Source of the DNA: Hydrolagus colliei
Taxonomy: Eukaryota
Assembly: GCA_035084275.1 (NCBI GenBank)
Contig: CM068756.1
Coordinates: forward strand, 14,322,001-14,386,000
DNA length: 64,000 bases
Reading direction: 5' to 3'
Shown: piece after piece, positions 1,131-32,689 of the stretch
Layout: each line of letters begins with the position of its first letter
Position numbering within the stretch: the stretch's first letter is position 1
The notes under the pieces: model-generated
Told to the model about the DNA's origin: nothing
What the model saw: the letters and a program-made list of their open reading frames with translations, nothing else
Databases searched by the model: none
Position numbers and translations under genes: made by a program

Positions 1131-1634
1131 ATTCTTCCTATATGCAGGTCTCCTGGGAGAGCAAGTCACATTCCATCCCTCAAGTCATCGGCAGGAGCTG
1201 CCGAACATTGACTGTCCCTCATGGCTCCATCCTCAGCTCCTGACTACCTATATGATCTATCTACTTGGCGACATCATCTGTGGACATCTAAGTGCACATA
1301 TACGAAGATGAAACCCAACTCTCCCTTTTTCCACACACAACAACCATCATCGACCTGATTAGGTCCCAAACTTCAAGTCCCTGATGAGCTCTGACTTTCT
1401 TCAACTGAATAATAATAATCTCTGCATTTTATACGGCGCCTTATATATCAAATACAATTATTAATATCATTATATCTCGTCATTGCATTACAAATCCCTT
1501 CAGACGAATGAATGAAAGGCACTATACAAATATAATTTTGTTGTTGATATTGTTTACGAGGCAATGCAGCTAAACATCCCTACGAGATTTGAATAAACAA
1601 CAGTTGACTTTTTAAAATTTGGTTAGATTCTTAC

Positions 1635-1970
1635 CTGCGTTAGGTTTTGGGATGGAATGTTTTGTGTCAGTGTAGGTGGCAATAGCTGCAGACTTCAGGC
1701 TGACGTGGAACACCAGACAAGTATAAACAGACGCTATCTGGACAGACTGTGTGTCTTCAATAGAGCTAGAGACCTTATAGAGTTCCCCAGAGTTCTGCTT
1801 TTCTATGGTTACTGTCTCTTCCACCTTGATTCCTGATGTTGGTGTAATTTCGTTCCCATCTTTATACCATATGAGGGTGAAATCCTTTGGGTAAAACGCG
1901 GTAGTTTCACACACAATTGTCCGATGCTGAGTAGAATTCCTAGAGAAAATCCTCAGTGGAGTTGGGGGAA
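1635..1970 (-). CDS. Gene 1 C1-set Ig exon
   Basis: ttctacag acceptor and G|gtaag donor; 336 nt, phase 1-1. VPPTPLRIF...VCETTAFYPKDFTLIWYKDG...YTCLVFHVSL shows C1-set hallmarks (CxxxxFYP, WxKD, YTCxVxHxxL). Confidence 0.93.
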
Positions 1971-2999
1971 CTGTAGAACAGATAATGGAGGAAAATTATA
2001 TTAAATTTTATCAATCATCTGGAAAAATTCAATTTTGATTCATTTCTTTGCAAGATCCTGATTTCTGAGAGCAAACGGAGGTTTCTTTAGATACACAAAT
2101 ATCACTCGCACAGCTGAATGCCTTCCTCCTACTTTAATTACTTTGTTGTTTAAACATTAATATTCAGTCATAATACTTGTCTTAAATATCATACGACGTA
2201 TAATGATTAGCACACAGAATTGATCGCTGCAAACTCTTGAACAGGGGAGATAGTGGATTCCTGACAGGAATCAGCACACTGTGGTATTCTAGATCAACTG
2301 ATAACATTCCAGCCTCTGAATTAGCGTGGCTTCATGCTCCACATCGGGACTTAGAATTCATATAGTCAACACTGAAACACCCGCTGCAATGCCATTCTTA
2401 GGATGAGAAATCAAATCTGGTTTAATTCTGAATGTTAACATTAAAGATCTCACGGCAAAATGAGAAAAGAGAATACAGGTTCCCTGGCAGCCTGCCCTGT
2501 AATGACACAACTTATTTTTAATGGTCTTCTACCCAATGACTGTTGTGGGACATTTCTGTACATAACTTGGCGGCTGTGTTTGCTCACAAAACTACTCTGT
2601 CTAGTCACTTTACAACATATCATGTGAAGTGCTTTGGGTTGTGTCAGTGGTGTGACCAGGTGCTGTATCGAATGATGGGACCCCCTTGAAAGGTTTTGAT
2701 CAGGTGAAGAAGGAAACAGTGAGTCCGTAACAAGAGTCCATAATTTGAAATCATCATTAAATAAAAGGAGAGGTTGAATTTTGATTTTACTGAGAAGCTG
2801 TTGGTACAAAATACAGTCTGAAGAACATTCCATAACAGCTGTTAAAAGGAATTGTAAAGTCATAGATTCTTTGTCTTCCATATGGATTTTGAATTAATTA
2901 TGCGAATAATATGGATAAATTCTATGATCTTCGTAACATTGTTGTAGAATGGATCGACTTCAAGATCTGCACTGCACTCTTGTGTTTAAATCTCTCCAC

Positions 3000-3390
3000 T
3001 GGTCTACACCCCCCCCCCCCCCCCCCCCCCCTCCCCCCTCCCACCTACATCTCTGATGGCCTCTCTCCTCACAACATTTGCGTTGCCTCCACTCTACTGG
3101 GTCCGGCCTCCTAGTTGTCCCCTAATCCTCCGTTCAACCATCGGCGGCCGTGCTTTCAGCCACTACCCGAAGCTTTAGAACTACCTCTCTCAACCCCTTC
3201 ACCTCAACCCCTTCACCTCAACCCCTTCACCTCAACCCCTTCACCTCAACCCCTTCCTTTCCCATGTGCAGGTCGCGCCTGAAGACCTTCTGTTCGACGG
3301 CGCCTATGGCTTCAGCCTCGAGGCTCCGCCAGTCTGAAGCGCTCTGATTCGCTGCCCGGTATGGAGTGCGCTATAGCAAAGCCAGCTGTT
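3000..3390 (+). repeat. Degenerate L2 3' fragment with poly-C tract and 14-bp tandem repeat (caaccccttcacct x4 plus partial, 3191-3257)
   Basis: Similar to the 3' end of the L2 at 11300-11690. Tandem unit read directly. Confidence 0.65.
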
Positions 3391-3596
3391 GCTTTAACAT
3401 TATTCGATAAGTGTGGTGAGTTGTACTATTTTGTGTTTTAGGTGTGTAGAGGTTGATTCTCACTTAATATACTGTACTCTAAAAACTAGTGAACAAACTA
3501 GTATGAACAAACAATACGAAAAGCTTTAAAGCATTCACTGCATTTATTACTTTCTATGTAATTTTCAGGTGCTTTCACTCTTCACTACACACTCAC

Positions 3597-3917
3597 CCTG
3601 CACAGTTAAACGTGATCCAGGTCCTGTTCCAATTCCTGATCCCTGACGGATCACTGAGCAGCGATAGACTCCAGAGTCCTGTAAACTCACATTCAGGAGC
3701 TGGAAGAAGCCGCTTCCTTTGCCTTTCACACCAAATGTTTTCCTGCTGTCCGCCTGTGTGTCCAAGTGGCCGTCCTCACCCTCCTTCTCCCACTTCACCT
3801 CCACTTCTGAACCGTGTTGAGAGAAGGGGAAGATACAGATGAAATTGATGTCTGACCCTTTGATGACAGTCGTACGTTCGGGGTTTTGACTCACTATGAC
3901 CGAAGAACCTTCAGGGA
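3597..3917 (-). CDS. Gene 1 V-set exon with germline-joined J-like motif (NKp30/SIRP-like)
   Basis: tctgacag acceptor and G|gtgagt donor; 321 nt, phase 1-1. Contains Cys (FIC), Trp (VKW) and DSGVYRC...GTGPGSRLTV. Confidence 0.94.
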
Positions 3918-4072
3918 CTGTCAGAAAAGAAAGTCAATCAATGATACATTAGATGATGCGTCGTGGAGTAAACAGACGAGTAAAAGAGGAAAGGACCGTA
4001 AGTTTGTATGATAAATGGCACATGGAAACAAGCTTTCACATATTCAGAGAGTTACTGAGTTATAGAATATAC

Positions 4073-4124
4073 CTGTTGAAATAAAATTTAAGACAAACAA
4101 GTACAGAAAGACAATGCTCCCCAT
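4073..4124 (-). CDS. Gene 1 leader (signal peptide) exon
   Basis: ATG...MGSIVFLYLFVLNFIST plus G|gtatat; 52 nt, phase 1; homologous to the gene 2 leader. Confidence 0.88.
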
Positions 4125-4129
4125 GTCGG

Positions 4130-4215
4130 AATCTGGCTTTGATGAGCTGTAACACGTGAACGTGAAGTGTTTATTATAGAGTAAGTTGCTGTGACACTGA
4201 CTTCCTGTTTGAAAG
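4130..4215 (-). promoter_or_regulatory. Putative proximal promoter of gene 1
   Basis: Block gctgtgacactgacttcctg (ETS core CAGGAAGT on minus) is conserved upstream of genes 2 and 3 and at the orphan site near 7500. TATAATAAA on minus at 4170-4178. Confidence 0.5.
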
Positions 4216-8409: not shown

Positions 8410-11400
8410 TCCTTCTCTACCCTTCTTTCTCTTCGCCCTCCTCGTTTACTGTCCCTGCTCAACCCTCCCACCGCTTCCCTTTGTTCCAGTTTAGGAATTC
8501 TCCGTCGGGCTCACAGTGGTACTCGGCGCTGGCTGTCCAACAGCAGCCACACCTAGTGCCCTGTCCCCCACCATCACCGCCAGCCCCACCGGACACAAAC
8601 CCGGGGGGTCAACCTCTCCTCTCTTATCCAGATCCCCACCCTCCCCGCCGACCATCCCAGCCCCCCCTCACACCCCTCGGCCAACTGCTCTTTCAGCATC
8701 GGCCTCCAAAATGTCCGCTCTGTCTGCAACAAGACCCTGGCCATCAACGATCTCATCCTTGACGAGAAGGTTGACATCATGGCCCTGACAGAGACTTGGA
8801 TCACCCTAGGCGACACTTTCCCCCTCGTTGAAGCCACACCACCCAACTACACATTCCACCATGCCCCTCGACCCAACTGTCGTGGCGGTGGTGTGGCCCT
8901 CATTTCAAAGACATCCCTCGCCCTATCCCCCTATTCCTCCGGTTCCTTCCCCTCTTTTGAACAGCTCACCCTCTCTCACTCCTCCCACAATTCCTTCAAA
9001 ATCCTATTAGTTTATCGCCCCCCCAAACCCTCCCCCACTTTCATTTCAGATTTCTCTTCACGTTTAACCCTCTGTGCTTCCTCTGATCGCCTCATCATTC
9101 TTGGCGACTTCAACATCCATTTCACCCCCTCCTGCCCCATTTCCTCTGAATTTTCCTCTTTACTTTCGTCTTTCAACTTCTCCCTTCACACTAACACTGC
9201 CACCCACACCCACGGCCATCCGCTCCATCTGGTGATCACCCGAGGCCTCAACGTCTCTGGCATCACCATCACCGACAAGGCCATTTCAGACAATTTTTTA
9301 ATCTCTTTCAAAACCTCTATCCCTCCCCCCTCCACCTCCAAACCCACCACCATCTTCTACCAGCCCTGGAAGAAGACTCCCCCTCAAACCTTCACCTCTG
9401 CCCTCGAAAACTCCGACCTCCTCCCACAGTGGCACTCTTTTTGCACTGACCCAGCCTCCACCTCCACCGCCCTCCATAACACCCTCTCCACTACCCTCGA
9501 CACCCTGGCCCCCCTCACCTCCAGAACCGTCTCCCACTCCCGATCATCACCGTGGTACACAACTCACCTCCGTTCCCTCAAAAGCCAAGTGCGAGCAGCT
9601 GAACGCACCTGGCTCAAATCTGTCCTCACGGTCCACCGGCAAATCTGGCTGGACCGCATCAAATTTTACCGCTCCGCCCTAGCCACCGCCAAATCAACCT
9701 TCTACTCCAGGATAATCCTGGAAGTGAAGGACAACCACCGCCTCCTCTTCGCCACCACCAACAAGCTCCTCCGCCCCCCCCCCGTCTCGCTTCGCAGATC
9801 CTTTCCTCAAACGAACGTTGCGAGGAGATTTTGGACTTCCTCGAGTCCAAAATAGAGAATCCGCTCCGCGGTTTCCTCCCCCCACCTTTCCTCCACCTCC
9901 GCAACTCCAGCCGTTATCTCAACCCCCACCCAAACCCCCTTCATACTTTCATTCCCACCTCCCCGTCTTCAATCACTAAAATAATCACCTCCATGAAACC
10001 CACCACGTGTTCATTGGACCCCATCCCCACCCCCCTCCTCCACACCCAGCTCCACCTTCTGACCCCGCTCATTTCTGACACCATCAACCTTTTCCTCTCC
10101 TCAGGCACCGTCCCTACCTCCCTTAAAACAGCCACCATCACCCCTATCCTGAAGAAACCCTCCCTTGATGCATCGCAACCATCAAGCTATCGACCCATCT
10201 CCAATCTCCCGTTTTTATCCAAGGTCCTTAAAAGAGTGGTTGCCTCCCAGCTCCGCTCTTTCCTTTCAACTCACTCACTCCTTGAACCCCTCCAATCAGG
10301 TTTCCGCCCTATCCACAGCACAGAAACTGCCCTGGTTAAGGTTACAAATGACATCCTAACCGCCTGTGACCAGGGCTCCCTCTGCCTCCTCGTCCTCCTT
10401 GACCTGTCTACTGCGTTCGACACAGTCGATCACACCATCCTCCTTCAACGTCTTTCCTCCCATCTCAACCTTCAAGGCACAGTCCTTGACTGGTTCCATT
10501 CCTACCTGACCCACCGCCTACACTTTGTGTCTTCCAACGGTTTCTCCTCAAACCCCCGCACAGTTTCTCACGGCGTCCCTCAGGGCTCTGTCCTAGGCCC
10601 CCTCCTTTTCACCCTTTACACGCTCCCTCTGCGCGATGCCATCCGCAAACATGGGGTAAATTTCCACATGTATGCGGACGACACCCAGCTGTACCTTTCT
10701 GCCTCATCCCTCAACCCCCATACCATCGATGTTCTGACAGCATGTCTGTCCGACATTGAGTCCTGGACGAGGGGCAACTTCCTCCAATTAAACGTGAGTA
10801 AGACCGAGGCCCTCCTGATTGGCTCAAGCCAGCGCCTCCGCACATCGGGCGCTGCCAGCCTCAACATCCAAGGCTGCACTCTCCACCTCACAAAGCCAAT
10901 CAGGAACGTCGGCATCATGTTCGATCAAAAACTCTACTTCCTCCCCAACATCCGTGCCTTGACCGGCACCGCTTACTTCCACCTGCGCAACATTGCCAGG
11001 CTCTGCAATTATCTTACCCCCCACGCTGCCGAAACACTCGTGCACGCGTACATCACCTCAAGGTTGGACTGTGGAAACTCTGTCCTCGTCGGCCTCCCCA
11101 GTTCCTCCATTCACAGGCTGCAGGTCATCCAAAACTCTGCAGCCCATGTATTATCCCGCACCCGCCTTCGCGACCACATAACCCCCACCCTCGCCCGTCT
11201 CCACTGGCTCCCCATCCTCCAGAGGATCGAGTTCAAGATCCTCGTCCTCACCTTCAAGGCCTTACATGGTCTTGCCCCGCCCTACTTAACCAATTTACTC
11301 TCCCCCTACAAGCCCACCCAGACCCTCCGCTCAGCAGGACTTGGCCTGCTCCAAGCCCCCCACCCGAACCGCCCCACCATCGGAGGCCGGGCCTTCAGTT

Positions 11401-11690
11401 TCTCCGCTCCCACTCTGTGGAATTCCATCCCCCAATCCCTCCGTCTCGTTTCTTCCCTTTCCTCTTTCAAGGCCGGTTTGAAGACTTTCCTCTTCGACCG
11501 TGCCTTTGTTCCACCCCGAATTTTTCGACCTCCCCTACGTGTTTCACCCCTTCCCAAACACTCCCCTCCCAGCTCGGGTCACAAGGCGCCTTGTGACCCG
11601 AGCCTTGGGACGTCCTCCCGACAGCGCCTTGTGACGTCCTCCCGACGTGAAAGGCGCTTTATAAGTGTAATTTGTTGTTGTTGTTTTTGT
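8410..11690 (+). mobile_element. L2-clade LINE, near-complete ORF2 (APE + RT), frameshifted near the poly-C at about 9775-9850
   Basis: APE motifs (ALTETW, GDFN) in 8779-9855. RT motifs ([32 protein letters not shown]) in 9831-11693. Ends in a (ttg)n tail. Confidence 0.95.
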
Positions 11691-12529
11691 TAATGCTGAT
11701 CAATGTTGAGCTGAAGAGAAACGGGGATTGTTCAATGGGGAGAAGAAGTTGTTATTTTCTTACTGTTGTCCGAATATCAAAGAGTCCAAACGAAAACACT
11801 CCAATGGCTGAAGCTGAATCCAACCTGTGACTGTGCTCTGGTCTGAACATTCCTCGAGTATTGCCCAGCAAGAAAGAGAGCAAGGCTCTTGCAATGGAAT
11901 TATACTTTGACATTTACAAATACAGAAGAACGATTGGGGTTTTAATGCTGAGTTGTTTCATGTCAGGTACATTCAAAGCAGAAGCGTGAATATCTATGCA
12001 TGCAAACTTCTATTTTTTTTACTGCATTCGGCTATTGTGCCACATATTGTTGACCATCTTTTAAGTTAGCCCATATCAAGCGTTGTTTTATGGATACTAG
12101 AGACAGAATAACTAGAGGAGACTGGTTCATACAATATGCTTTTTATTGAAATGCTGATTGAGCATGCTACACAGCAGTTCCTAATATTGTAGTAGAGTTA
12201 TTCTATATTCTAATAATTCTGTGGTTACATTTATGGATTGATCAGATTCACAGTAAATATGCTTTAGCAATTAATTATGGTTATATGTGTATTGTAAACA
12301 ATTATTTCCAAGAAATTTCCTGAAGACATATTATGTAAATATTAATAAATGTGATTGAAACAGGTGAAAGCGGAAGAGAATGATTAATATGCACATTTTT
12401 CACTATAGTGGAAAACTACATTTAATAATAACATAATAAACAATAATAATCCTTACATTTGATATAGAGCTTTCCACATCTTATTGATGGTCTCAAAGCG
12501 CGTATATATACTGTGCACCATTATCAGTT

Positions 12530-12676
12530 TCAGTGCCTGTTGCATTTCTTAGATCTTGGTTCCCTGCAGATAGCTGCTGCTTCTCCTCTGTGGTTTCTCA
12601 CATCCTCTGTATTCTTAACGGACGTCAACTTCAACGCAACATATGCCACCACCTTACTCTCAGCTCCGAGCATCAT
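12530..12676 (-). pseudogene. Third tandem Tyr-motif exon downstream of gene 2, acceptor mutated
   Basis: Reads MMLGAESKVVAYVALKL...; the AG acceptor seen in paralogues is CG here (12678-12677). Conserved AATAAA (minus) at 12142-12147. Confidence 0.6.
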
Positions 12677-13039
12677 CGATAAAACATAACACCACAACAA
12701 CAACATATTGTATTTGTAGAACATCTCTCATGTTGGCAGTAGATCCCAGGTTGCTGATAGATTGCGGTCTTCACTGTTCTGATGATTTGCTATATATTTA
12801 TAGTTGAATGCTTACTACTGTACTTGGCTAAGCTGTATCTGAAGCATAAGAATTCCATGTTATGATGTTTGATTTATTTTATCCGATTCTAGCGAAGAAA
12901 TTGATTGATCAAATCAAAATCAAGACATTGTGTTCCGTAACTCTTGTTTATTGAAAATCACAAAACCACTTCACAATGTTACAAACTATCAGAACCTAGT
13001 TTGAGATTTGAATTGGTATATTTTGTTCTAGAGATGTAA

Positions 13040-13990
13040 CAACAACTTTGATTTATATAGCGCCCTCCACGCAGGACGGCATCTCAGAGCGTTTCAGACT
13101 CCCCGAGCCAGGGGGAGGGGGAAAAAGGTGAGCAAAGGCATGGTTGAACAGAAAGGTCTTCAACTGAGACCTGCAAGAGAGGGAGTGAGGTGAAGGGAGT
13201 GAGGAAGGGAGTTCCAGAGCTTCGGGGCATAGTGGCTGAAGGCATGGCTGCTGATGGTCGAGCGGAGGATTTGGGGATAAGGAGGTGACCAGAACCAGAA
13301 GAGTGAAGGCAACGGGTGCTGTTTTGGCGGAAGAGGAGGTCAGAGAGGTAGGGGGTGCAGAAGAGTAGAGATAAAAGTGAGGTTCTTTAAATCGATCCTC
13401 TCCGGGACAGGGAGCAAGTGAAGTCTGGCAAGGACTGGGGTAATAGGGGAGCAAAGTTTGATGCAGGTGAGAATGCGGTTGGCAGAGTTCTGAAGGAGCT
13501 GGATTTTATGGATTGTGGTGGAGGGGAGACCAGCGAGGAGTGCATTTGCACAGTCCAGCCGAGAGGTGACAAACGCATGGACCAAAGTTTCAGCAGCTTT
13601 TGGGACAAGGAATTGCTGGAGACGGGCAATATGTAGGAGGTGGAAAAAAGCAGTGCTCGTGAGGGACTAGATGTGGGGGAGGAAGGACAGTTGGGGGTCG
13701 AACCTGATGCCAAGCTTGCGTACTGGTTCATAGAGTTTTAGGGGCAGGTCGGTTAGGTGGAGTAGGTGAGAACTGCATGATTGAAGACGATGACGAGAGC
13801 CAAAGAGTATGGCTTCCGTCTTGTCAACTTTCAGCTGCAGGAAATTCACGCTCATCCAGCTCCTGATGTCTGACAGGCAGGCTGACAGTACATCAAGGTA
13901 CTGGGTGGGGGGGTCGCAAAATGAGGTGGAAAAATAGAGTTGGATGTCATCCGCATACATATGGAAGTGTATCCCATGTCTGTGGATAAC
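13040..13990 (-). mobile_element. L2 LINE 3' fragment
   Basis: MYADDIQLY..., AFVTSRLDCANALL... in broken frames; tail at about 13040. Confidence 0.85.
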
Positions 13991-14080
13991 ATCATCAAGC
14001 AGACCAGCATTGATATAAACACTGTCGCTAGTCTACATCACTAGGAATCTGTACAGTGTTAATTGTCTAATATTGTGACA

Positions 14081-14245
14081 TTATGCGATTCCTGATTCCA
14101 TGGCAGTGACAGCTTTGTAATTTCCGATATTTACCTCTGCATACTCTGAATTCTTGTCGCGGCGTTTAGCTTTTCCTGTTTTTTGGTTGCGAGGGAAATC
14201 CAGATCAGCGTAGGTCAGCTTGTTAGCGGCTGCTCCTTGCTTGGT
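14081..14245 (-). CDS. Gene 2 cytoplasmic exon B (ITIM LTYADL and SEYAEV) to stop
   Basis: cttttgcag acceptor, phase 0. TKQGAAANKLTYADLDF...NSEYAEVNIGNYKAVTAMESGIA*. Confidence 0.82.
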   Translation of the reverse strand, partial: TKQGAAANKLTYADLDFPRNQKTGKAKRRDKNSEYAEVNIGNYKAVTAMESGIA

Positions 14246-15073
14246 CTGCAAAAGAAAAATGGTTGGGATTGTCTTTTTGCTGGTTCCATAAATACACATA
14301 AATGTACATAGAACGGCACGGAAACTGAGCAGCTGGTGTTTATAATTCACACAACATCCATCCTTACCTATTTTCGTCTGTTTTCTCAAATTTCTTCTCA
14401 TGTATGCATTAAGTTTTATGTTAATAATATTGTTACTTTATTGTGAACCCATCAACCCCATGGCCAATTGATAAATTGGTTTCAAACTGCGATATCCAGC
14501 TGCAGATTTAAGGCTTGCCGATCTCAGCGATGAGCTGACAGCTGCTTTCATGTGTTGTTGCAGATTAGTTAATGTTGCAAATCCTAATTGCGCTATGAGA
14601 AATTAACATCTCAGGACATCTGGATCGGAACACATGTAATTCTCTTTAAATTAATTGCTGAATTGTTGATTCTTATATAAAGATATAATCTTAGGAATTG
14701 ATAGCCCAGAAGGCCAGTCTGCTGGTTGTACACAGGCTGCCTATTTGAAGGAATAATGTATTGAGTCCCATTTATTCGGCTTTCACCAACGCTCCTTTAA
14801 ACTGATCCATTTGGGATGTCCTCTCGACGTGAAAGACACTATATAAATGTAAGTTTTTATTGATTGATTTTATAAATACCCTTTATCTTTAGTTTAAAAA
14901 ATGATATTGGTTAAATGCTGGAAGGTTGAACACGTTTGACAACTAAATGGAGCATCAAAACATGTTAGAAGATTCGGTGGATGGAGGGTGGGGGGAACAG
15001 AATCGGGGATAAAGTATCAAATGATGCCTATTTACCAAACCTGTTTAATACAGGTTTAATACATGTTGTTTAC

Positions 15074-15184
15074 CTGGGCATATACGGTCCTCTCTTCCTG
15101 GTGTTTAGGTCTTGGAATTTTATTGGAACTTCTCAAATCCAATGTTACATAAGCCACGTTGTCACCCACTGCTCCCTCCCGCGT
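15074..15184 (-). CDS. Gene 2 cytoplasmic exon A (ITIM VAYVTL and TVYAQ[V])
   Basis: gttttacag acceptor; 111 nt to CAG|gtaaac. TREGAVGDNVAYVTLDL...ERTVYAQ. Read-through gives VNNMY* with the stop at 15056-15058. Confidence 0.85.
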
Positions 15185-15892
15185 CTGTAAAACAAAGTAT
15201 AGAGTAAAATGGTTGTTCGGTTGCCTTCCCAGGTCTGTACTCTTTGACCATGGTATTGAATAAGTAGGGATTTTAGGGAAACAATGGCTACTGTCATTTC
15301 AAATAGTTAAAGACAGGTAACGTTGAGTAGGTAGATTCAGTTCTCTCTAGAGGCAGTAAAATTCATGTGTCCAACTGAGGTTTTGCCATCCACCCCCATG
15401 AAAATATGTGCAGACCTGATTAGATGGACCAAACAAGATGTCTCACATACATAAAGTATCATCACTTAAAACATGCTGGAACTCGTCACAGTCGTGACTC
15501 AGAATGGTTACTAGAAATGTAAATTACAGCAAGTAAACCGTATTTATTCAAGTAACAACTTAATCCTGTTATGGGAAATAAATACGTGTGTAATTCTGGA
15601 GGAATTATTAAATTTAGAAAACTTTCAGTCCACAATCCAATTCAACGTAACTGCTGTCTTGTTGGGGTGGGACGAGATTTGTGAATCACAATCATAAGAA
15701 ATTGACGATACACTTTGTTATGGTTTTGGGGACCATTTTGTGTGCTGCAGGTTGGTTGCAGTAAATAGAGTTGCTACAAAGTCAACGATTCGCAGTCGTG
15801 AAGCATTTCTAAGACCCTTATAGTTATATGGGCCACAATGATAATTACTAAATTGGTCCATTGGTTACCCAAATTATTGGTGATAAACTTAC

Positions 15893-15936
15893 CCGATGTT
15901 CAAGATTGCCCAATCGAGTTGGGTTTCCCTTTGATC
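15893..15936 (-). CDS. Gene 2 short cytoplasmic exon
   Basis: catatttag acceptor and CGG|gtaagt donor; 44 nt, phase 1 to 0 (GSKGNPTRLGNLEHR). Links the TM exon to exon A in frame. Confidence 0.72.
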
Positions 15937-16664
15937 CTAAATATGAATAAAATGTATTGAATTGTATATTTACTAAATTTCAATGTTAACACTAAAATAA
16001 TGCAATTGTTCTACATTTCAGGAAGAATGTAATGACAAGTAGAATCTCCACGTCACTAATACTTTCCAAAATCCTTAACACTGTGGAACTCTTGTCTTGA
16101 ACATTTGAAATCTCAATGTAATGGGAAATAAAGGCTATGCTGACAACTATTCCTTAATTCTTTTAGTTTTTAGTCTTAAGAAACTGGGATATTTCCTGCA
16201 ATCTGGGTCTAGGTCTGGGTCTAGCTCTCAGTAATAAAAAATATTTTTGAGGTCACAATTTCAATATACTGTAATATATATGGTGAATTTTACTACTGAT
16301 AAACATACTCTTGGTTCTAGTCCCTGTATTTGTTTGATTTCATTCATCACCACAGTCACTTACAAATGCACAACATTCATCGTATTTTAAGGTGTTTGAA
16401 ATATATTAAGTCAGATTTCAGACATTGGGATTTGGAAAATGAGACATTCTGGGATACTAACATTCACCATGAGAAATTGTTACAGTAATGAATCTGTTGC
16501 AATAACTACAAGTAATTGATATTATATCCTTGACATCATATAAATCTGCTGTCAAATTTGAAGTAACAAGTAATACTTTTTCTCTTTGCTAACCATTGGT
16601 GCATTCTTAGTTCTGATATCAATGGGTAATGTTTACAATTGCAATGAAATGAGAATTTTCTTAC

Positions 16665-16778
16665 CATTTTTCTTTTTCAATTGGCATCGCTTCCCAATTA
16701 TCATCAAAAGCACCAGAAATGTGACCACACCCGCAGCACAGCCACCATATAGTAAATAACGGGTTTGATTTCCACTCC
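16665..16778 (-). CDS. Gene 2 transmembrane exon
   Basis: tttctccag acceptor and G|gtaag donor; 114 nt. YLLYGGCAAGVVTFLVLLMIIG followed by basic KRCQLKKKN. Confidence 0.9.
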
Positions 16779-17909
16779 CTGGAGAAATAGCATACACTGA
16801 GGTGAAACTGTACATTGCGTAAGGGAACGATTTATAGCTTTAGTACAATAGAAATGTCATGCATATCATTTATGAAGCATATCTTGCGGTAAATTTAAGT
16901 AAGTATTAAGCACAATAACCGGATTAACTATTATGTCTAATCATAATCTGTGTCTTTATTGAAATAAGAATAAAAATTGGAAGGGGACCTTCACTGACAA
17001 CATCTTGCTGTTGATGTAGGGTAAGAAGGGTGTAACAATCTACATATGCACTCGCATATTTTTATTGTTGTTCTTGATTCTATTACACAGGCGACGGCAA
17101 CACACAGAATACCAAAATGCGATATCAATTTTCAGGGGAACCATCACAAAATACAATCCATAAATTGCACAGTCCATAAATTGCACAGACGCCTGTACAT
17201 CGCGCTGTCTGATGACAGCGATGAAACGTGCTCACTTGTGCTCACTTGTTATTAGTAAAAGGAAGGATGGAAAAGCATTTGATGATCAAGTGTCCTGTGC
17301 TGAAACTGAGATTTTGAAAATTATGCAGCTTTTTGAATGTGCTGATGATATCCATAATTTTCAAGTAGAGAATATCAGTTAGCCTAACAAAATGTTTGAT
17401 GATTCAGGTCGAATGTTTCACATTCAAACAGGATGATGTAGTTTGTCACCCCCAGGCAGAAAACCCTCATCACCATTCTCAACACCTTTGTTTCCTATCA
17501 ACCCTGGCATTGCTTCCTATTCCTGCAGATCTCCCGGGATAGCAATATTGGCAGTTCCTCAGGGTTCTATCCTCTGCCTCTCCTCTTCACTATCTATATG
17601 TTTCTACTTGGCGACATCATCTGTAGACATGTATTGCACATCCACTTGTATAACGATGAAACCCAAATCTCCCATCTATCGACAGAAAAGGCCTCCAATT
17701 CCTTGATGAGTTCTGAACTTCTTCAGCGGAATAATAATCCCTGCATTAGATATAGCACCTTACAGATCAAATGCAATTATTAGTATTATTCTGTTATTGT
17801 CATCTAAAATTGCTTCAGTTGATTCACTTGGTGAATCAATGCAACTAAACATCTCTATGAAAATTCAATGAATAACAGTTGACTTCTTAAAAATCGTTAA
17901 GCAGCTTAC

Positions 17910-18043
17910 CAACAATAGATTTTGTGACAGTGTAGGTGGCAATAGCTGAATTCTTGAGGCTAATGTGGGACACCAGACAAGTAGAAATAAATAGACGCTA
18001 GCTGGACAGACGTGAATGTTCGATAGAACTGGAGACCTTATAG
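17910..18043 (-). pseudogene. Degenerate duplicate of the 3' half of the C1 exon
   Basis: Aligns to YKVSSSIE...YTCLVxHxSLKxxAIATYT of gene 1/2 C1 with indels. Keeps the G|gtaag donor. Confidence 0.7.
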
Positions 18044-18213
18044 ATCTTTGTGTTTTAGATAGCGCCTTATATATCGAATGCAATGATTACGATTATTATT
18101 ATCTCATTTATTGACGTCTCAAATCGCTTCAAAAGATTCACTTGATGAATCAAGGCAAGTAAACGTGCCTATGAGAATTCAATTAACAAATTGAAAATCG
18201 GTTAGCAACTTAC

Positions 18214-18534
18214 CTGCGTCAGATTTTGGGTTGGTGTAGGTGGCAATAGCTGAAGTCTTGAGGCTGACATGAGACACCAGACAGGTATAAACAGATGATA
18301 TCTTGACAGACTGTATGTCTTCAATAGAGCTAGAGACCTTCTTGATTTCCCCAGGGTTCTGCTTTTCTATGCTTGCTGACCCTTCAAACTTTATTTCTGG
18401 TGTTGGAATAATTTGGCTCCCATCTTTATACCATGTGAAGATGAAATCCTTTGGGTTACACCCGGTAATTTCACACACAAGAGTTTGATGCTCAGTTGAA
18501 TTTCTAGGGAAAATCCTCAGTGGAGTTGGGGGAA
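18214..18534 (-). CDS. Gene 2 C1-set Ig exon
   Basis: ttctgcag acceptor and G|gtaag donor; 321 nt. VCEITGCNPKDFIFTWYKDG...YTCLVSHVSL. Confidence 0.92.
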
Positions 18535-19694
18535 CTGCAGAACAGAGAGTGGAGGATATTCATATTAACTTAGATCAATTGGCGGGACAAACTTTATTTT
18601 GATCCATTTCTTTGCAAGACTATGAGTCCTGAATGCAAATGGAAGGTTCTTTAGACGCATAAATATCCCTCTCATCAGGCGAAATTGATCACTGCAAACT
18701 CTCGAACAGACGAGATAGAGGATTCCTGACAGGTGTTTGTACATTGTATTATTCTGGCTCAATTGGTGGCTTTCTCGCCTCTGAGTTAGAAAGATATGGG
18801 TTCAGGCTCCGCATCGGGATCTCATGGCATTCTTCAAAAATAGAACAGAGTTTCCCTGGTGGCCTGCCCTACAATAACGCAAATTTGAAAAAAGAAATGG
18901 TCATCCACCCCATGGCTGTTGTGGGACATTGCTGGGAATAAATTGGTGGCTGTGTTTGCTCATAAATTACTCAGTCTCATCACTTTGGGAAATGTGATAC
19001 ATTTGCAGTGGCTTAAGTTGGCTGGGGGCGCAGCTTTAGAGTCTTGAGCCCCCGAGTGCATGTGGAGCCAAGGACCCCAGTGTGTGGAGCCTCAACAAAA
19101 ACTTAGTTAGGGTGGGCACCGATATTAAAGTTTGGAAGCCACTTCTCTAGCGGGTTTCAATGGTGTGGCAAGGCACTGTATCAAATGAAGGAATTGTATT
19201 ATTTAAGTCTTCAGAGGTTTTGAATAGGTAAAGAGGGAAACGATGAGTCAAAAACAAGAATTCATCAGTTAAAATGTTTACCATGAAATAAAGGAAAGGT
19301 TGAATACTGATTTTTCTGAGAGGCGATTGGATCAAAATCAAAATATTGTACTAAAGCAGTGTCCATAACAGTTATAAAAAAGGAATTTAAAAATCATAGT
19401 TCTTTTGTCTTCTATATGGATTTTGGAATACTCGTGTGAATAACATGCATCAATTCTGTAACTGTTATAACAGTAGAATATATAAAATATTTCATTAAGT
19501 TGTGATGACTTGAATTGTTTTGAGTTTCAGTTTTAGTGTATATGTTGAAATTAAAATGTTATTTCACTTAATATATGCCATAAACTAGTACGTGAAAATG
19601 ATTAATGGACAAACAATATACATCAATATACCATACAACGCATCATTACTTTTAATGTAATTTCCGAATACTTTCGCTCTTCATCCACACTCAC

Positions 19695-20015
19695 CGCACA
19701 CAGTTAAGCTTGATCCAGGTCCTGTTCCAATTCCTGATCCCTGACGGATCACTGAGCAGCGATAGACTCCAGAGTCCTGTAAACTCACATTCAGGAACTG
19801 GAAGAAGCCGCTTCCTTTGCCTTTCACACCAAATCTTTTCCTGCTGTCCGCCTGTGTATCCAAGTAGCTGTCCTCACCCTCCTTCTCCCACTTCACCTCC
19901 TCTCCTGAACCGTGTTGCGAGAAGGGAAAGATACAGCTGAATGTGACGTTTGTCCCACTGATGGCAGCCACACGTTCAGGGATTTGAGTCACTTTCACTG
20001 AAGAATCGCCAGCAA
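19695..20015 (-). CDS. Gene 2 V-set exon with J-like motif
   Basis: tctgacag acceptor and G|gtgagt donor; 321 nt. FSC...VKW...DSGVYRC...GTGPGSSLTVC. Confidence 0.94.
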
Positions 20016-20159
20016 CTGTCAGAAAATAAAGTCAAACACCGATTTCTGAGAAAAAGTAGGTACATAGAGAAAAAAACTTAAATATGTATGATAAATGGCA
20101 TGTGGAAACAAGGTAGCACATAATTCATAGAACAATGAAGTTATGCAATAAATATATAC

Positions 20160-20211
20160 CAGTTGAAGCAATATTTATGACAGCCAGGTACAGAAAGAGA
20201 ACACTCCCCAT
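20160..20211 (-). CDS. Gene 2 leader exon
   Basis: MGSVLFLYLAVINIAST plus G|gtatat; 52 nt. Confidence 0.88.
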
Positions 20212-20355
20212 TTCTGACTCTGGCTCTGATGAGCTGTAACACATGAACCTACAGTATTAGATATAGAGTACGTAGCTGTGACACTGATTTCCTGTTTCTT
20301 TGGGTTCATGAAATGTCGCTGTTGTTGTTGTTGATGTGATTTGAAATCACACGTC
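20212..20355 (-). promoter_or_regulatory. Putative promoter and 5'UTR of gene 2
   Basis: gctgtgacactgatttcctg (GGAA core on minus) and palindrome TGTGATTTGAAATCACA at 20335-20351. Confidence 0.5.
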
Positions 20356-21349
20356 TACAGTAAAATTGTAATTCCCCTGATTAATAGAGAAAGGTTAAAC
20401 ACATATCTAAACATACAACAATAGCATTCAACCTCACTATCTATCGAGGCAGTGGTGCTTTCTCTAATCGGAAATATTATTTTAAGCATCAACTCCGCTT
20501 GGAGTCAGTAGTGTCAGAAACAGGCCAATCTGGTGGCATCTTTCTGCTGATAGTTTTATCTATGCCCTATTTACAGAAATTAACCTTTCCCTCTAAAGCA
20601 CACCCCATCCCTCTATACAACCAAATTATCGTCCCATCTTAACCTTACGTATCCAAAGTCTTGGCCACTCAACTTTGCTACTACTGTACCTGTTTCTCCA
20701 CTGAGTCAAAGAAATCCATTTTCTACACAAGCGATAGACAGCACAGTCAAAGTCACGATAATATACACTCTCTGTGTTTCTCTCTCTCTCTAGAACCGCA
20801 GCCATCTGCCTTTTTGTGTTCCTTTATATCCAAACAACAAGAACAACACAATTATATTTTTTATAATGCCTTTCACGTCAGGAGGATGTCCCAAGTCTGT
20901 CTGTCTGAACAACCAAGGTGCCTCTGTCTTTTTGTCCTCTTACATGTTCTGTTGTACTTTGCACTGGAGATGAAGTGTATTCTTGGCCCACTTCTTGTTC
21001 CCATCTACGTGTTCTCTAGGTGATACTAACCACAGAAACGCTATTAACTTCTACATTTATGTGAGTGAAAGAAAAGTCTACTTTCCAATGCTGATTCTCT
21101 ATCCACTTGTGTGTCAAGATGTACAGTAGATGACCCCAGATTTCCTCTAAATTAATATTGATAATGGAATGCATTCTGCAAATATTTCCTTTCTCCCATG
21201 TCTTGCTGGACCACCAATCGTGCCCATACCTTCATTTCTTCTCCACAAAATACACAAATACATACATAATTTCATAGAGGAAGGTTCTATTACTTGAATT
21301 TCCAGTTGTAGACATTAAATCATATGATCTTACTTAGGTCAAACAAGAT

Positions 21350-29557: not shown

Positions 29558-29632
29558 TTACTCTGTATTCTTAACGGGAGTCAAATTCAACATGACATAA
29601 GCCGCCGCCTCATTTTCTACTTCGAGCATCAT
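29558..29632 (-). CDS. Gene 3 terminal cytoplasmic exon (MMLEVENEAAAYVMLNLTPVKNTE*)
   Basis: ttttatag acceptor; Tyr at codon 12 as in gene 2 exons A and B. Conserved AATAAA (minus) at 29156-29161. Confidence 0.62.
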   Translation of the reverse strand: MMLEVENEAAAYVMLNLTPVKNTE

Positions 29633-30329
29633 CTATAAAACATAATGCACAATAACAAAACAGTTTATTTGTGGAACATCCTTTATGTCGAGACTACATC
29701 CCAGGGCCCTGATAGATTGTTGCCTTCACTGTTCTCGAGATTGCTGTGTATGTAATCTTTGGAAAACTCATAAATTTAAAACATTGCAAATATTTAATAA
29801 GTAAACTTACAGTTTTATTGAAAACTCTGTTAAAAATGACACGACACTTCATATTTGAATGATACATTAAATCCGAGCATTTGCGCGTAGAGAATATATT
29901 TTAAATATTCCTATATATTTATGGTGAACAGTATTTTTCCATTGCAACAACCCTGAGTTCAGATTAAATATGTGCTGAAGAACAATTAATGAAGGCACTG
30001 GCTCTTCGCAATGGCACAATCCCTTCTGGTTTATGTGTGGGCCTTTGAAAGAAATTCAATAAATGAAGTACTGTATACACTTTTGGTTATGTATCGCACA
30101 GCCCAAATGTAAAGGATTTAGAAGCTCACAAGCTGCCTGTCTGTTTTTCTATAAAAAAAACTAAACTCCATCCCAGAGCCCCTCGAATTCTGCCTTTCCC
30201 GCTACTGCTTAAAAATCTTTGATGAAACAATCAGGAGAATAGATAGTTGAGGGTATAAAATATAAAACCAATAGGTAAAACAGTATAACTTTATATAAAT
30301 CGGCAGTGACACAGTTGGAATAATGTATC

Positions 30330-31524: not shown

Positions 31525-31638
31525 CGTTCCTTTTTTTCAAATTGCATTGATTCCCAATGATGATCAAAAGCAGCAGAAATACCAGGCCTCCCCCTACACA
31601 TCCAGCGATCAGTAGGTAGTCAGTCTGAGAGTAATTCT
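31525..31638 (-). CDS. Gene 3 transmembrane exon
   Basis: ttcttgcag acceptor and G|gtaag donor; 114 nt. YLLIAGCVGGGLVFLLLLIIIG then NQCNLKKRN; same length as the gene 2 TM exon. Confidence 0.9.
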
Positions 31639-31972
31639 CTGCAAGAACATCATAAACTGAGTGTCAGTGATCCCAGCAATGTATTTGTTTTTCAGTAATA
31701 GCAATCATGTAGAACACAGGAATTTAACATATACATTTGATAATCTCACTTCTAATTGAACAGAATCCAAGAGTTTGAAGGTTGATGAGTTTTTTTAAGA
31801 GTCTTCTAGGGGACTAGTATGAATATGTGAATCTGATTTGATATATATTTCTATGGAGTATATGGACAGAAAATGATATGATTCTCCATTGTCTTCAGTA
31901 CAAATAAAAATGAAATATTTTCCAATGATAATCTAGCTAACAGCAAGTCATTGTAGGATATCTGTAAATTAC

Positions 31973-32266
31973 CTGTGATGGGTTTCGAAATGATGTAGAC
32001 GCCAATCACTGGAGTGGTGAGGGCGACGTGCTTTGCCACACAGGTATAAACAACCCCGCTCTGTACAGGTTGTGTGTCTTCCATATCAACTTCGAAAAGT
32101 CCATCTGATTTTCTCTTTTTTGTCAGATTTGTCCCAGTAATAATTTCAATGTCGTCTTTATACCAAGTGAGCGTTATATCCTCCGGATAAAACCCAGCCG
32201 TTTTACACACAAGAGTCTGAGGTGTCAACGAATCTCTGGGGAATATCTTTGGCGAAGTCGGGGGGA
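31973..32266 (-). CDS. Gene 3 C1-set Ig exon
   Basis: cctacag acceptor and G|gtaat donor; 294 nt. LVCKTAGFYPEDITLTWYKD...DGLFEV...YTCVAKHVAL. Confidence 0.93.
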
Positions 32267-32689
32267 CTGTAGGACAGACAATGGAGGAGAATTGCATTAC
32301 TTTTGATCAGTTGGAATGTACAACTTTATTCCCATTTGAATTGTATATGAAATCTTTCCCTGCAACAGTATAAGAGGAAAAGTCCTCCGAGACTCTAACC
32401 ATGTGAGGGCGCAATTCAAATGTTGTTAGAACAAGGAATCTGGATTATAACGGAAAGAGACTGATCCTTTTTTTTTAAACAATGTTTAGGGCAGCAAATG
32501 ATAAAAGATGCAGGAGTTCCAGCCGTTATTCAGCCGAGTAATAGGTGGATGAAAGGACTTAGGTACGATGATAAAATGGGTAAACATGGTGTATATTTGA
32601 TGGATTTGGGAAGAGTGGCAGGTAATTTTATTGAGCTGTCAACGAATGCCAAAGTATTGCAGGATGCATAATTTTGATAGAAAACAATA

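What the first reader, a model, noticed from the sequence alone, without database searches (positions are those of the whole stretch)
14081..15184. Signalling tail built from a duplicated 111-nt two-tyrosine exon with a splice-or-read-through switch
Seen: exons A (15074-15184) and B (14135-14245 to its internal GT) are both exactly 111 nt, phase 0, with Tyr at codons 12 and 35. In both, the GT of a possible donor is also the start of the Val codon completing the second motif (TVYAQ|V, SEYAE|V). Read-through of A gives ITIM VAYVTL plus ITSM TVYAQV and a stop, with AATAAA at 14856-14861 and 14771-14776. Splicing A to B removes the ITSM Val and adds LTYADL and SEYAEV. Known: ITIM is (I/V/L/S)xYxx(L/V), ITSM is TxYxx(V/I), and SIRP-alpha carries LTYADL and SEYASV. 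Inference: one splice decision toggles between a 2-Tyr ITIM+ITSM tail and a 4-Tyr SIRP-alpha-like tail.
Basis: partly seen in the sequence, partly recalled or inferred. Interest (0 to 1): 0.75.

Follow-up and report, generated by a model that had tools for sequence, protein, structure and literature searches.

The report
SIRP-alpha-like inhibitory receptor tail exons
These two look-alike exons are the ordinary cytoplasmic end of a chimaera (ghost shark) immune receptor gene resembling SIRP-alpha, made by an ancient exon duplication and most likely always spliced together; nothing supports a splice-or-read-through switch.

Summary
The sequence observation is correct. On the minus strand, exon A (15184-15074) and the first 111 nt of exon B (14245-14135) are in-register homologues, each with Tyr at codons 12 and 35. 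They are the last two exons of a complete 7-exon, 375-aa gene: leader, IgV, IgC1, TM, a 44-nt exon, A and B.

The window is collinear with Callorhinchus milii LOC103185896 at about 76% nt identity, so it comes from another chimaera species. Homologues exist in sharks and a ray, and RefSeq names them 'tyrosine-protein phosphatase non-receptor type substrate 1-like' (SIRP-alpha-like).

All annotated relatives join an A-type cassette ending ...RTVYAQ to a B exon beginning TKQG.... A-type and B-type units separate in a tree across chimaeras, sharks and a ray, so the duplication is ancient. Cassette number varies between family members from 0 to 2.

The proposed switch is not supported:
- Val on read-through is automatic, because GTN always encodes Val.
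- The early stop is not conserved (5 to 89 codons in relatives).
- Neither cited AATAAA exists in the C. milii orthologue.
- No transcript-derived protein was found.

Verdict: an ordinary new member of a known receptor kind, with a tidy exon-duplication history.

The parts
20160..20211 (-). Exon 1: start codon and leader peptide (MGSVLFLYLAVINIAST), ends in phase 1
   Evidence: Read from sequence. The model closes the frame. Aligns with the leader of C. milii P0002.
19695..20015 (-). Exon 2: IgV domain with a J-like GTGPGSSLTV motif, 321 nt, phase 1-1
   Evidence: Pfam V-set 7.6e-8. Same 321-nt exon in C. milii and Heptranchias.
18214..18534 (-). Exon 3: IgC1 domain, 321 nt, phase 1-1
   Evidence: Pfam C1-set 4.5e-5. 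PDB hits to IgM constant domains and to SIRP-alpha 2wng spanning V-C1.
16665..16778 (-). Exon 4: stalk, transmembrane segment (YLLYGGCAAGVVTFLVLLMIIG) and KRCQLKKKN stop-transfer sequence
   Evidence: Only strongly hydrophobic 19-mer between C1 and exon A. ccag|GG ... ATG|gtaaga. Homologous TM exons in relatives.
15893..15936 (-). Exon 5: 44-nt cytoplasmic exon (GSKGNPTRLGNLEHR) that moves the frame from phase 1 to phase 0
   Evidence: tttag|GA ... CGG|gtaagt. 38/44 nt identical to C. milii. Relatives have an equivalent small exon: 41 to 44 nt including its split first codon, listed as 36 to 42 nt of whole codons.
15074..15184 (-).
   Evidence: 100/111 nt identical to the C. milii orthologue against 52-69% for the gene's introns. 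Clusters with A-type units of sharks and a ray.
15056..15073 (-). Donor GTAAAC and the hypothetical read-through codons VNNMY-stop
   Evidence: Not conserved: C. milii reads VHSIEKSCIEQVW-stop.
14246..15073 (-). A-B intron, 828 nt. It holds the AATAAA hexamers at 14856-14861 and 14771-14776 and a 57-nt insertion at 14802-14858.
   Evidence: Alignment with C. milii: the first hexamer straddles the edge of an insertion absent from C. milii, and the second is GGTAAA there. Repeat match of 14811-14877 to 11629-11694. Hexamer statistics.
14081..14245 (-). The internal GT at 14134-14133 is the Val codon of SEYAEV.
   Evidence: 143/165 nt identical to C. milii, with no indel and the same stop position. 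The +3 codon is GTA in the window, C. milii and Heterodontus but CTA in Heptranchias.
12520..12670 (-). Degenerate A-like cassette downstream of exon B (…GAESKVVAYVALKLTSVKNT…). It has tatcg in place of an acceptor ag, no second Tyr and no GT donor, so it is probably a relic.
   Evidence: tblastn against the tail of P0004, sequence read. A paralogous copy lies at 29560-29640.

Best explanation
The region holds the last two coding exons of an inhibitory immunoglobulin-superfamily receptor gene of a chimaera (holocephalan). Its architecture is leader, IgV, IgC1, TM, a 44-nt exon, cassette A, then terminal exon B.

A and B descend from one ancestral two-tyrosine exon by a tandem duplication that predates the split between chimaeras and sharks/rays. 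Each unit carries two tyrosines 23 residues apart. By analogy with SIRP-alpha, such a pair is a bidentate docking site for the tandem SH2 domains of SHP-1/SHP-2 once phosphorylated by Src-family kinases.

The normal mRNA joins A to B. This gives a tail with VAYVTL, TVYAQT, LTYADL and SEYAEV, plus a C-terminal GNYKAV. That is the SIRP-alpha layout of two tyrosine pairs.

The GTA after the second tyrosine is the same ancestral triplet in both copies. In the terminal copy it is read as the +3 Val of the motif. In the upstream copy it serves as the 5' splice site.

Family members differ in signalling capacity through germline changes, not through a splice switch: cassette number ranges from 0 to 2 A-type units, and some B exons are truncated.

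Shown here: the sequence, the gene model, the homology, the conservation and the junction used in annotated relatives.

Inferred: phosphorylation, SHP recruitment, inhibitory function and constitutive splicing in this species.
For: - Gene model: seven AG/GT-bounded exons give one 375-aa ORF with a leader, V-set and C1-set domains and one TM segment.
- Orthology: the window is collinear with the C. milii LOC103185896 locus over about 7.8 kb at 68-81% nt identity, introns included.
- Selection on the exons: A is 90% and B 87% identical to C. milii, against 52-69% for introns. B keeps its frame and stop position.
- Junction in relatives: the C. milii models P0002 and P0001 read ...RTVYAQ|TKRGAAANKLTYAALDL...SEYSEV.
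- Exon maps of six relatives (C. milii x2, Heptranchias x2, Heterodontus, Mobula) show the same layout. The A-type cassettes are 99-111 nt, phase 0-0, and end YAQ|GTA (YTQ|GTA in the second cassette of P0004). The B exon starts cag|ACCAAG or a close variant.
- Age of the duplication: A-type and B-type units fall on opposite sides of one branch (support 92/79), and do so in 100% of 200 bootstrap trees.
- SIRP-alpha resemblance: unit B against the published human ITIM1+2 peptide scores z = 10.2, with Tyr spacing 23 against 24.
- Bidentate docking: tandem SHP-2 SH2 domains bind tandem SIRP-alpha ITIMs more tightly than single motifs (PMC3958483).
- Exon count: mouse Sirpa exons 6, 7 and 8 follow the exon 2-5 block of that paper, the same number of cytoplasmic exons as here (PMC12324903).
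- PDB: the best hit outside immunoglobulin (antibody) chains that spans V-C1 is SIRP-alpha 2wng (E = 1.4e-7).
- Germline variation: P0004 has two A cassettes plus a B exon stopped at the ITIM Tyr codon, P0007 has a truncated B, and P0011 and P0017 have no A unit.
Against: - No RNA evidence for this species could be obtained. The junction is inferred from relatives' RefSeq models, which are themselves partly predictions.
- In the spliced protein the second motif of unit A (TVYAQT) has Thr at +3. It fits neither the ITIM nor the ITSM consensus, so 'bidentate SHP docking' is less secure for unit A than for unit B.
- The ectodomain has one C1 domain, not two as in SIRP-alpha.
- A tail-only database search found only chondrichthyan proteins. 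Homology of the tail to tetrapod SIRP-alpha therefore rests on one published 35-residue peptide.
- A LINE fragment lies about 75 nt after the stop codon. It could affect the 3' end of the mRNA.
Confidence: 0.75

Rival explanations
1. Exon A's donor competes with read-through and intronic polyadenylation. Cells would then make either a short tail (VAYVTL plus a complete ITSM, TVYAQV, then VNNMY-stop) or the long 4-Tyr tail.
For: - Read-through completes a canonical TxYxxV motif, which the spliced form lacks.
- A stop follows 5 codons later.
- The A-B intron has the highest density of AATAAA/ATTAAA among the gene's introns: 5 against 2.0 expected (P = 0.05), or 6.0 per kb against 0-2.1.
- The donor lacks the consensus G at +5 (GTAAAC).
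Against: - Val on read-through is forced for any phase-0 GT donor.
- 22% of intronic GT sites in this gene reach a stop within 5 codons.
- In the collinear C. milii orthologue the extension is 13 codons with no shared residue beyond the Val.
- Both AATAAA hexamers are absent there. One straddles a 57-nt repeat-derived insertion, and the other reads GGTAAA.
- Six other A-type cassettes read 12-89 codons to a stop, with 0 or 1 PAS hexamer in the intron.
- The donor matches 7 of 9 consensus positions, more than the leader exon's donor at 6 of 9.
- Both sides of the junction (RTVYAQ|TKQ) are the best-conserved part of the tail across the family.
- No protein ending in a read-through form was found in full-length, tail-only or fragment searches.
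Confidence: 0.1
2. Any isoform choice is by in-frame skipping of cassette A (111 nt, phase 0-0), not by read-through. That would give a tail with unit B only.
For: - The cassette is symmetric, so skipping keeps the frame.
- Family proteins lacking an A unit exist: P0011 and P0017.
- In the Heterodontus locus L004, an A-like ORF with a CAG|GTAGGG donor lies inside the 8.6-kb intron that model P0017 skips. A longer 383-aa model exists at the same locus.
Against: - The L004 cassette is preceded by purine-rich sequence without a convincing acceptor, so it may be a dead exon rather than a skipped one.
- The sequence of the 383-aa model could not be retrieved.
- Exon A here has a strong pyrimidine tract and acceptor and is 90% conserved.
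- There is no transcript evidence.
Confidence: 0.2
3. The locus is a decaying duplicate in a multigene cluster, and the tail exons are no longer expressed.
For: - The cluster contains relics: degenerate A-like cassettes at 12520-12670 and 29560-29640, and a partial C1 duplicate with stops at 17752-18045.
- A LINE fragment is inserted just after the stop codon.
- No identical or near-identical protein is in the databases.
Against: - All seven exons are intact with canonical splice sites and one open frame.
- The exons are 76-90% identical to the C. milii orthologue (A and B 87-90%) against 52-69% for introns, without frameshifts.
Confidence: 0.07

Closest known systems
SIRP-alpha (SHPS-1 / PTPNS1 / BIT / CD172a)
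   Same: - Type I receptor with an N-terminal IgV domain carrying a J-like motif, followed by IgC1.
- Tail with two pairs of tyrosines: LTYADL is identical to a SIRP-alpha ITIM, and SEYAEV compares with SEYASV/TEYASI.
- Pair spacing is 23 against 24 residues.
- Unit B aligns to the human ITIM1+2 peptide at z = 10.2.
- Three cytoplasmic exons follow the TM exon, as with mouse Sirpa exons 6-8.
- RefSeq names the relatives PTPNS1-like.
- The C. milii orthologue has a predicted C1-less form, like 'short SIRP-alpha'.
   Different: - One C1 domain, not two.
- The first unit diverges: VAYVTL/TVYAQT, z = 3.1 against the SIRP-alpha peptide.
- There is an extra C-terminal tyrosine.
- It belongs to a tandem multigene cluster with variable cassette number.
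- CD47 binding and 1:1 orthology are untested.
Other ITIM/ITSM receptors whose cytoplasmic exons are alternatively spliced (PECAM-1/CD31, CEACAM1 long and short tails); from general knowledge, not tested here
   Same: Small cytoplasmic exons each carry a tyrosine motif, so exon choice can change signalling capacity.
   Different: In those genes the isoforms are documented by cDNA. Here no isoform evidence exists, and comparative data argue against a conserved switch.
Splice versus intronic polyadenylation choice at the immunoglobulin mu heavy-chain locus (secreted versus membrane form); from general knowledge
   Same: The formal logic is the same: a 5' splice site competes with a poly(A) site inside the following intron.
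   Different: There the poly(A) site and the short C-terminal extension are conserved and functional. Here the hexamers and the extension are absent from the orthologue.
Chondrichthyan V-C1 'PTPNS1-like / tapasin-related-like' gene family (automatic RefSeq models of C. milii, Heptranchias perlo, Heterodontus francisci, Mobula hypostoma, Scyliorhinus)
   Same: Same exon plan, the same A-type and B-type cassettes, and the conserved RTVYAQ|TKQ junction. The window gene is the positional orthologue of C. milii LOC103185896.
   Different: It is from a different chimaera species: 75% identity in the tail and 55% over the aligned part of the full-length protein. It keeps the C1 exon in the model, whereas the C. 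milii RefSeq model omits it.

Membership tests
ITIM-bearing inhibitory Ig-superfamily receptor | Type I membrane protein with an Ig-like ectodomain and a single TM segment lacking a charged residue | tested here: met
   V-set and C1-set Pfam hits. One hydrophobic segment, YLLYGGCAAGVVTFLVLLMIIG, with no Lys/Arg/Asp/Glu inside. Leader peptide present.
ITIM-bearing inhibitory Ig-superfamily receptor | At least one cytoplasmic (I/V/L/S)xYxx(I/V/L) motif | tested here: met
   VAYVTL, LTYADL and SEYAEV are in the spliced product.
ITIM-bearing inhibitory Ig-superfamily receptor | Phosphotyrosine-dependent recruitment of SHP-1/SHP-2 (or SHIP) and inhibition of signalling | not testable with these tools
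   Needs phosphopeptide binding and cell assays.
SIRP-alpha (PTPNS1) | Ectodomain of one IgV plus two IgC1 domains | tested here: not met
   There is only one C1 exon (18534-18214). The sequence at 17752-18045 is a partial C1 copy with stop codons. Relatives also have V plus one C1.
SIRP-alpha (PTPNS1) | Cytoplasmic tail with four tyrosines arranged as two pairs about 24 residues apart | tested here: met
   Y-to-Y spacing is 23 in both units. The human ITIM1+2 peptide has spacing 24 (PMC3958483). Unit B against that peptide gives z = 10.2 and unit A z = 3.1.
SIRP-alpha (PTPNS1) | Detectable sequence relationship of the ectodomain to SIRP proteins | tested here: inconclusive
   SIRP-alpha 2wng (E = 1.4e-7) and SIRP-gamma 4i2x are the best hits outside immunoglobulin (antibody) chains that span V-C1. 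IgM constant domains score higher, and light chains and tapasin-related protein score similarly.
SIRP-alpha (PTPNS1) | Binds CD47; orthologous genomic position | not tested
   No binding assay is possible. No bony-vertebrate genomic locus could be fetched with these tools.
ITSM (SLAM-family-type switch motif, TxYxx[V/I]) | The motif is present in the expressed protein | tested here: not met
   The spliced product reads TVYAQT. TVYAQV exists only in the hypothetical read-through product. SEYAEV has Ser, not Thr, at -2.
Regulated splice versus intronic-polyadenylation switch | A poly(A) signal and short alternative C-terminus in the intron, conserved in orthologues | tested here: not met
   Both AATAAA hexamers and the early stop are absent from the C. 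milii orthologue. Other family introns have 0 or 1 hexamers.
Regulated splice versus intronic-polyadenylation switch | Transcripts of both kinds are observed | not testable with these tools
   No transcriptome access. Protein searches found no read-through form and no fragment from this species.

The most novel reading that the evidence does not exclude
In this chimaera lineage a repeat-derived insertion and point changes have newly created poly(A) hexamers in the A-B intron. A fraction of transcripts would then end there and yield a short receptor whose second motif becomes a true ITSM (TVYAQV).

More generally, the +3 Val codon (GTA) of an ITIM/ITSM may act as a latent 5' splice site. That would let terminal tyrosine-motif exons be internalised after tandem duplication, which would explain how cassette arrays of SHP-docking units grow.
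Probability: 0.1. Interest if true: 0.5.

Novelty: new member of a known kind. Interest (0 to 1): 0.22.

Why it matters
As it stands, the finding correctly annotates one more inhibitory receptor gene in a cartilaginous-fish Ig-receptor cluster.

The modest general point is evolutionary. The SIRP-alpha-type tail of two tyrosine pairs is built from a symmetric, phase-0 two-tyrosine exon that was already duplicated before chimaeras and sharks/rays diverged. Cartilaginous-fish paralogues vary the number of these docking modules by gaining, losing or truncating cassettes.

The identity of the donor GTA in one copy with the Val codon of the motif in the other is a clean example of a terminal exon becoming an internal exon.

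If the read-through isoform were real, it would be a compact way to swap an incomplete motif for an ITSM. Nothing found here indicates that it is real.

Tried and rejected
- Tail-only homologue search (residues 262-375) to reach bony-vertebrate SIRP-alpha: only four chondrichthyan proteins came back.
- Search with the 144-aa TM-to-end fragment, to catch short transcript-derived ORFs including read-through forms: 9 candidates, none scoring. No isoform evidence either way.
- Genomic look-ups of P0013 and P0027, to see cassettes whose junction lies two codons later (YxxVQ|T): not on record. That second donor position is inferred from protein sequences only.
- Literature searches for SIRP-like receptors in cartilaginous fish or elephant shark: nothing relevant. 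The SIRP review PMC12975943 says nothing about tail exons.
- Rfam scan of 12000-21000 on both strands: no RNA family. The plus-strand ORF at 14969-15187 is just the antisense of exon A.
- Heterodontus isoform P0017 as proof of cassette skipping: downgraded, because the skipped A-like sequence lacks a convincing acceptor.
- A profile search of the 1.84-billion representative library with the tail: not run. A profile of about 40-110 low-complexity columns was unlikely to reach significance, and that library carries no names.
- B's internal GT splicing on to the relic cassette at 12520-12670: rejected as unlikely. The relic has no AG acceptor at the homologous place, and B's downstream codons and stop are conserved in C. 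milii.
Full report
**What is in the sequence.**
The finding lies on the minus strand. Exon A runs 15184..15074 (ttttacag|ACG … CAG|GTAAAC). It encodes TREGAVGDNVAYVTLDLRSSNKIPRPKHQEERTVYAQ. Exon B starts at 14245 (ttttgcag|ACC). Its first 111 nt encode TKQGAAANKLTYADLDFPRNQKTGKAKRRDKNSEYAE, followed by GTAAAT, and the frame runs on (VNIGNYKAVTAMESGIA) to the TAA at 14083-14081. Tyr is at codons 12 and 35 in both. Read-through of A gives VNNMY-stop. AATAAA lies at 14861-14856 and 14776-14771.

**The two exons are true duplicates.**
- 62 of 111 nt are identical in register, against 29.4 +/- 4.5 for shuffles (z = 7.2, maximum 48 of 20,000).
- The protein local score is 59 against 18.5 +/- 3.9 (z = 10.3).
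- In the whole 64-kb window each is the other's only significant tblastn hit.
- The similarity extends about 45 nt into the upstream intron. It covers the stretch TAT GCN NAG GTA AAY, so A's donor and B's Val-Asn codons are the same ancestral bases.

**The gene.**
Upstream on the same strand are five more exons:
- a leader exon (20211-20160);
- an IgV exon (20015-19695);
- an IgC1 exon (18534-18214);
- a TM exon (16778-16665);
- a 44-nt exon (15936-15893) that shifts the frame from phase 1 to phase 0.

All junctions are AG/GT, and the seven exons give one 375-aa ORF. Pfam finds V-set and C1-set domains. In the PDB the best matches outside immunoglobulin (antibody) chains that span V-C1 are SIRP-alpha (2wng, E = 1.4e-7) and SIRP-gamma.

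Two paralogous V-C1 units lie in the window. Gene 3 has V at 3933-3568 and C1 at 1995-1615, about 79% nt identical to this gene, and its tail runs off the window. Gene 1 has V at about 34945-34295, C1 at 32306-31854 and TM near 31618. This is therefore a tandem receptor cluster embedded in LINE and LTR-retroelement debris.

**Relatives and source.**
The protein's relatives are all chondrichthyan: Callorhinchus milii, Heptranchias perlo, Heterodontus francisci, Scyliorhinus, Mobula and stingrays. RefSeq mostly names them 'tyrosine-protein phosphatase non-receptor type substrate 1-like', which means SIRP-alpha-like.

No protein is more than 71% identical over the aligned part. The window is nevertheless collinear with the C. 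milii LOC103185896 locus (L001) from upstream of the leader to beyond the stop codon, at 68-81% nt identity including introns. The window thus comes from another chimaera species and carries the positional orthologue.

Against that orthologue, exon A is 90% identical and exon B 87%. The 44-nt exon is 86% and the TM exon 76%, while introns are 52-69%. Exon B has no indel and keeps the same stop position. Both exons are under purifying selection as coding sequence, and the part of B beyond its internal GT is translated rather than spliced out.

**How the tail is put together in the family.**
I mapped six annotated relatives onto their genomic loci: C. milii P0002 and P0004, Heptranchias P0005 and P0008, Heterodontus P0017 and Mobula P0015. 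All share the plan leader / V / C1 / TM / one small exon (41-44 nt including its split first codon) / zero to two A-type cassettes / terminal B exon.

Every A-type cassette is phase 0-0 and 99-111 nt. Each ends …TVYAQ|GTA, except the second cassette of P0004, which ends …TVYTQ|GTA. The B exon begins cag|ACCAAG (TKQ…) or a close variant. The protein stretch RTVYAQ|TKQ(G/R), which spans the junction, is the best-conserved part of the tail across the family.

A maximum-likelihood tree of 30 units puts all 12 A-type units on one side of a branch and all 9 B-type units on the other. Support is 92/79, and the split appears in 100% of 200 bootstrap trees. The alignment has only 38 columns, so the finer branching is unresolved. 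The A/B duplication is therefore older than the split between chimaeras and sharks/rays.

Tail diversity in the family is germline-encoded:
- P0004 has two A cassettes and a B exon in which TGA replaces the ITIM tyrosine codon.
- P0015 has two near-identical A cassettes.
- P0007 has a truncated B.
- P0011 and P0017 have no A unit.
- P0009 and P0027 have three units.

**Relation to SIRP-alpha.**
The human SIRP-alpha ITIM1+ITIM2 peptide printed in PMC3958483 is TNDITYADLNLPKGKKPAPQAAEPNNHTEYASIQT. It aligns to unit B across both tyrosines with one 1-residue gap (score 61, z = 10.2, 0 of 2000 shuffles), and more weakly to unit A (z = 3.1).

That paper also shows that the tandem SH2 domains of SHP-2 bind tandem SIRP-alpha ITIMs much better than single motifs. 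This is the basis for reading each 111-nt exon as one bidentate phosphatase-docking module.

In mouse Sirpa, exons 6, 7 and 8 follow the exon 2-5 block analysed in PMC12324903, the same number of cytoplasmic exons as here. I could not verify where the mammalian introns fall relative to the motifs.

The ectodomain has one C1 domain, not two, and a tail-only database search reached only chondrichthyans. I therefore call the gene SIRP-alpha-like, not a demonstrated SIRP-alpha orthologue.

**The proposed switch.**
Each element was tested:
1. 'The donor GT also starts the Val codon.' GTN always encodes Val, so every phase-0 intron reads Val on read-through. What is specific here is only that the exon ends two codons after the tyrosine.
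2. The early stop. 22% of intronic GT sites in this gene meet a stop within 5 codons. In the C. milii orthologue the extension is 13 codons (VHSIEKSCIEQVW). In five other A-type cassettes it is 12, 16, 22, 22 and 89 codons.
3. The AATAAA hexamers. There are 3 in the intron against 1.0 expected (P = 0.085), or 5 against 2.0 with ATTAAA (P = 0.05). This is the highest density among the gene's introns. However, neither cited hexamer exists in C. milii. The first straddles the edge of a 57-nt insertion (14802-14858) that overlaps a dispersed repeat. The second reads GGTAAA. Other family introns have 0 or 1.
4. Donor strength. CAG|GTAAAC matches 7 of 9 positions of MAG|GTRAGT. The leader exon's necessarily constitutive donor, CTG|GTATAT, matches 6.
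5. Products. No protein with a read-through end, and no fragment from this species, appeared in three database searches.

The switch therefore has no positive evidence, and the comparative evidence argues against a conserved one. Without RNA data it cannot be excluded for this species, and I give it about 0.1.

In-frame skipping of cassette A is somewhat more plausible (about 0.2). The Heterodontus case that looked like predicted skipping is ambiguous, because the skipped A-like sequence lacks a convincing acceptor.

One real oddity remains. In the spliced protein the second motif of unit A is TVYAQT. It fits neither the ITIM nor the ITSM consensus, yet it is the most conserved element of the tail. 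Its binding partner is unknown.

**History inferred.**
B's +3 codon is GTA in the window, C. milii and Heterodontus but CTA (Leu) in Heptranchias. What is conserved in B is a hydrophobic +3 residue, not a splice site.

The simplest history starts from a terminal exon ending …xEYAxV…stop. It was duplicated in tandem together with its acceptor. In the upstream copy, (C/G)AG|GTAAA happened to be an adequate 5' splice site and was joined to the downstream copy's acceptor. The upstream unit thereby lost its +3 Val.

A degenerate third cassette downstream of B (12520-12670) has no acceptor AG, no second Tyr and no GT. A paralogous copy sits in the gene-1 tail region (29560-29640). Both show that cassettes are also lost.

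**Verdict.**
The feature is an ordinary new member of a known receptor kind, with a neat but unsurprising exon-duplication history.

Noticed in passing
window 15027-15052 (-): A 26-nt block, TGTATTAAACAGGTTTGGTAAATAGG, lies 22-47 nt into the A-B intron. It is 24/26 identical to C. milii, although the intron averages about 69%. It contains a second GTAAAT. It may be a splicing element or a cryptic donor.
   Followed up: no
window 13056-14005 (-): A LINE reverse-transcriptase fragment (Pfam RVT_1) is inserted about 75 nt after the stop codon of exon B, in the same orientation as the gene. It is absent from the C. milii orthologue, which has about 150 nt there. It may supply or disturb the 3' end of the mRNA.
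   Followed up: partly
window 12520-12670 (-) and 29560-29640 (-): Two mutually homologous, degenerate A-like cassette sequences (…VAYVALKLTSVKNT… and …AAYVMLNLTPVKNTE-stop). The first lies downstream of exon B and has no acceptor AG. The second lies downstream of gene 1's TM exon and has an in-frame stop. They are relics of, or variants on, the cassette.
   Followed up: partly
window 17752-18045 (-): A partial tandem duplicate of the 3' end of the C1 exon plus its downstream intron (74% identical to 18059-18346). It carries stop codons, so it is a pseudo-exon.
   Followed up: no
window 1615-4210 (-), 31600-34945 (-): Two further V-C1 receptor genes lie on the same strand. Gene 3 is about 79% nt identical to the gene studied, and its tail runs off the window. 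Gene 1 has a similar uncharged TM exon near 31618 but no intact A or B exon in the window.
   Followed up: partly
L001 11140-11463 (C. milii): The C. milii RefSeq model P0002 joins V directly to TM and skips a C1 exon whose ORF is intact. This recalls the C1-less 'short SIRP-alpha' isoform of mouse (PMC12324903).
   Followed up: partly
L002 15931-15963 (C. milii P0004): In this paralogue the terminal B exon has TGA exactly where the ITIM tyrosine codon sits (…NNLT-stop). The B unit is switched off in the germline, while two A cassettes are kept.
   Followed up: no
window 8557-11690 (+), 45437-49571 (-), 55300-58100 (+): Retroelement content of the window:
- A LINE with endonuclease and RT ORFs (8557-11690).
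- An LTR-retroelement pol (RT, RNase H, integrase) with a weak, below-cut-off gag-like zinc-knuckle match upstream (45437-49571).
- A second, broken copy in the opposite orientation (55300-58100).

These were annotated piecewise only.
   Followed up: partly
family-wide: The most conserved tail element, RTVYAQ|TKQ, gives a tyrosine with Thr at +3. That is neither an ITIM nor an ITSM, and its partner is unknown. Some paralogues (P0009, P0027) instead have units ending YxxVQ|T or YxxLQ|T, like human TEYASIQT. This suggests a second donor position two codons downstream.
   Followed up: partly
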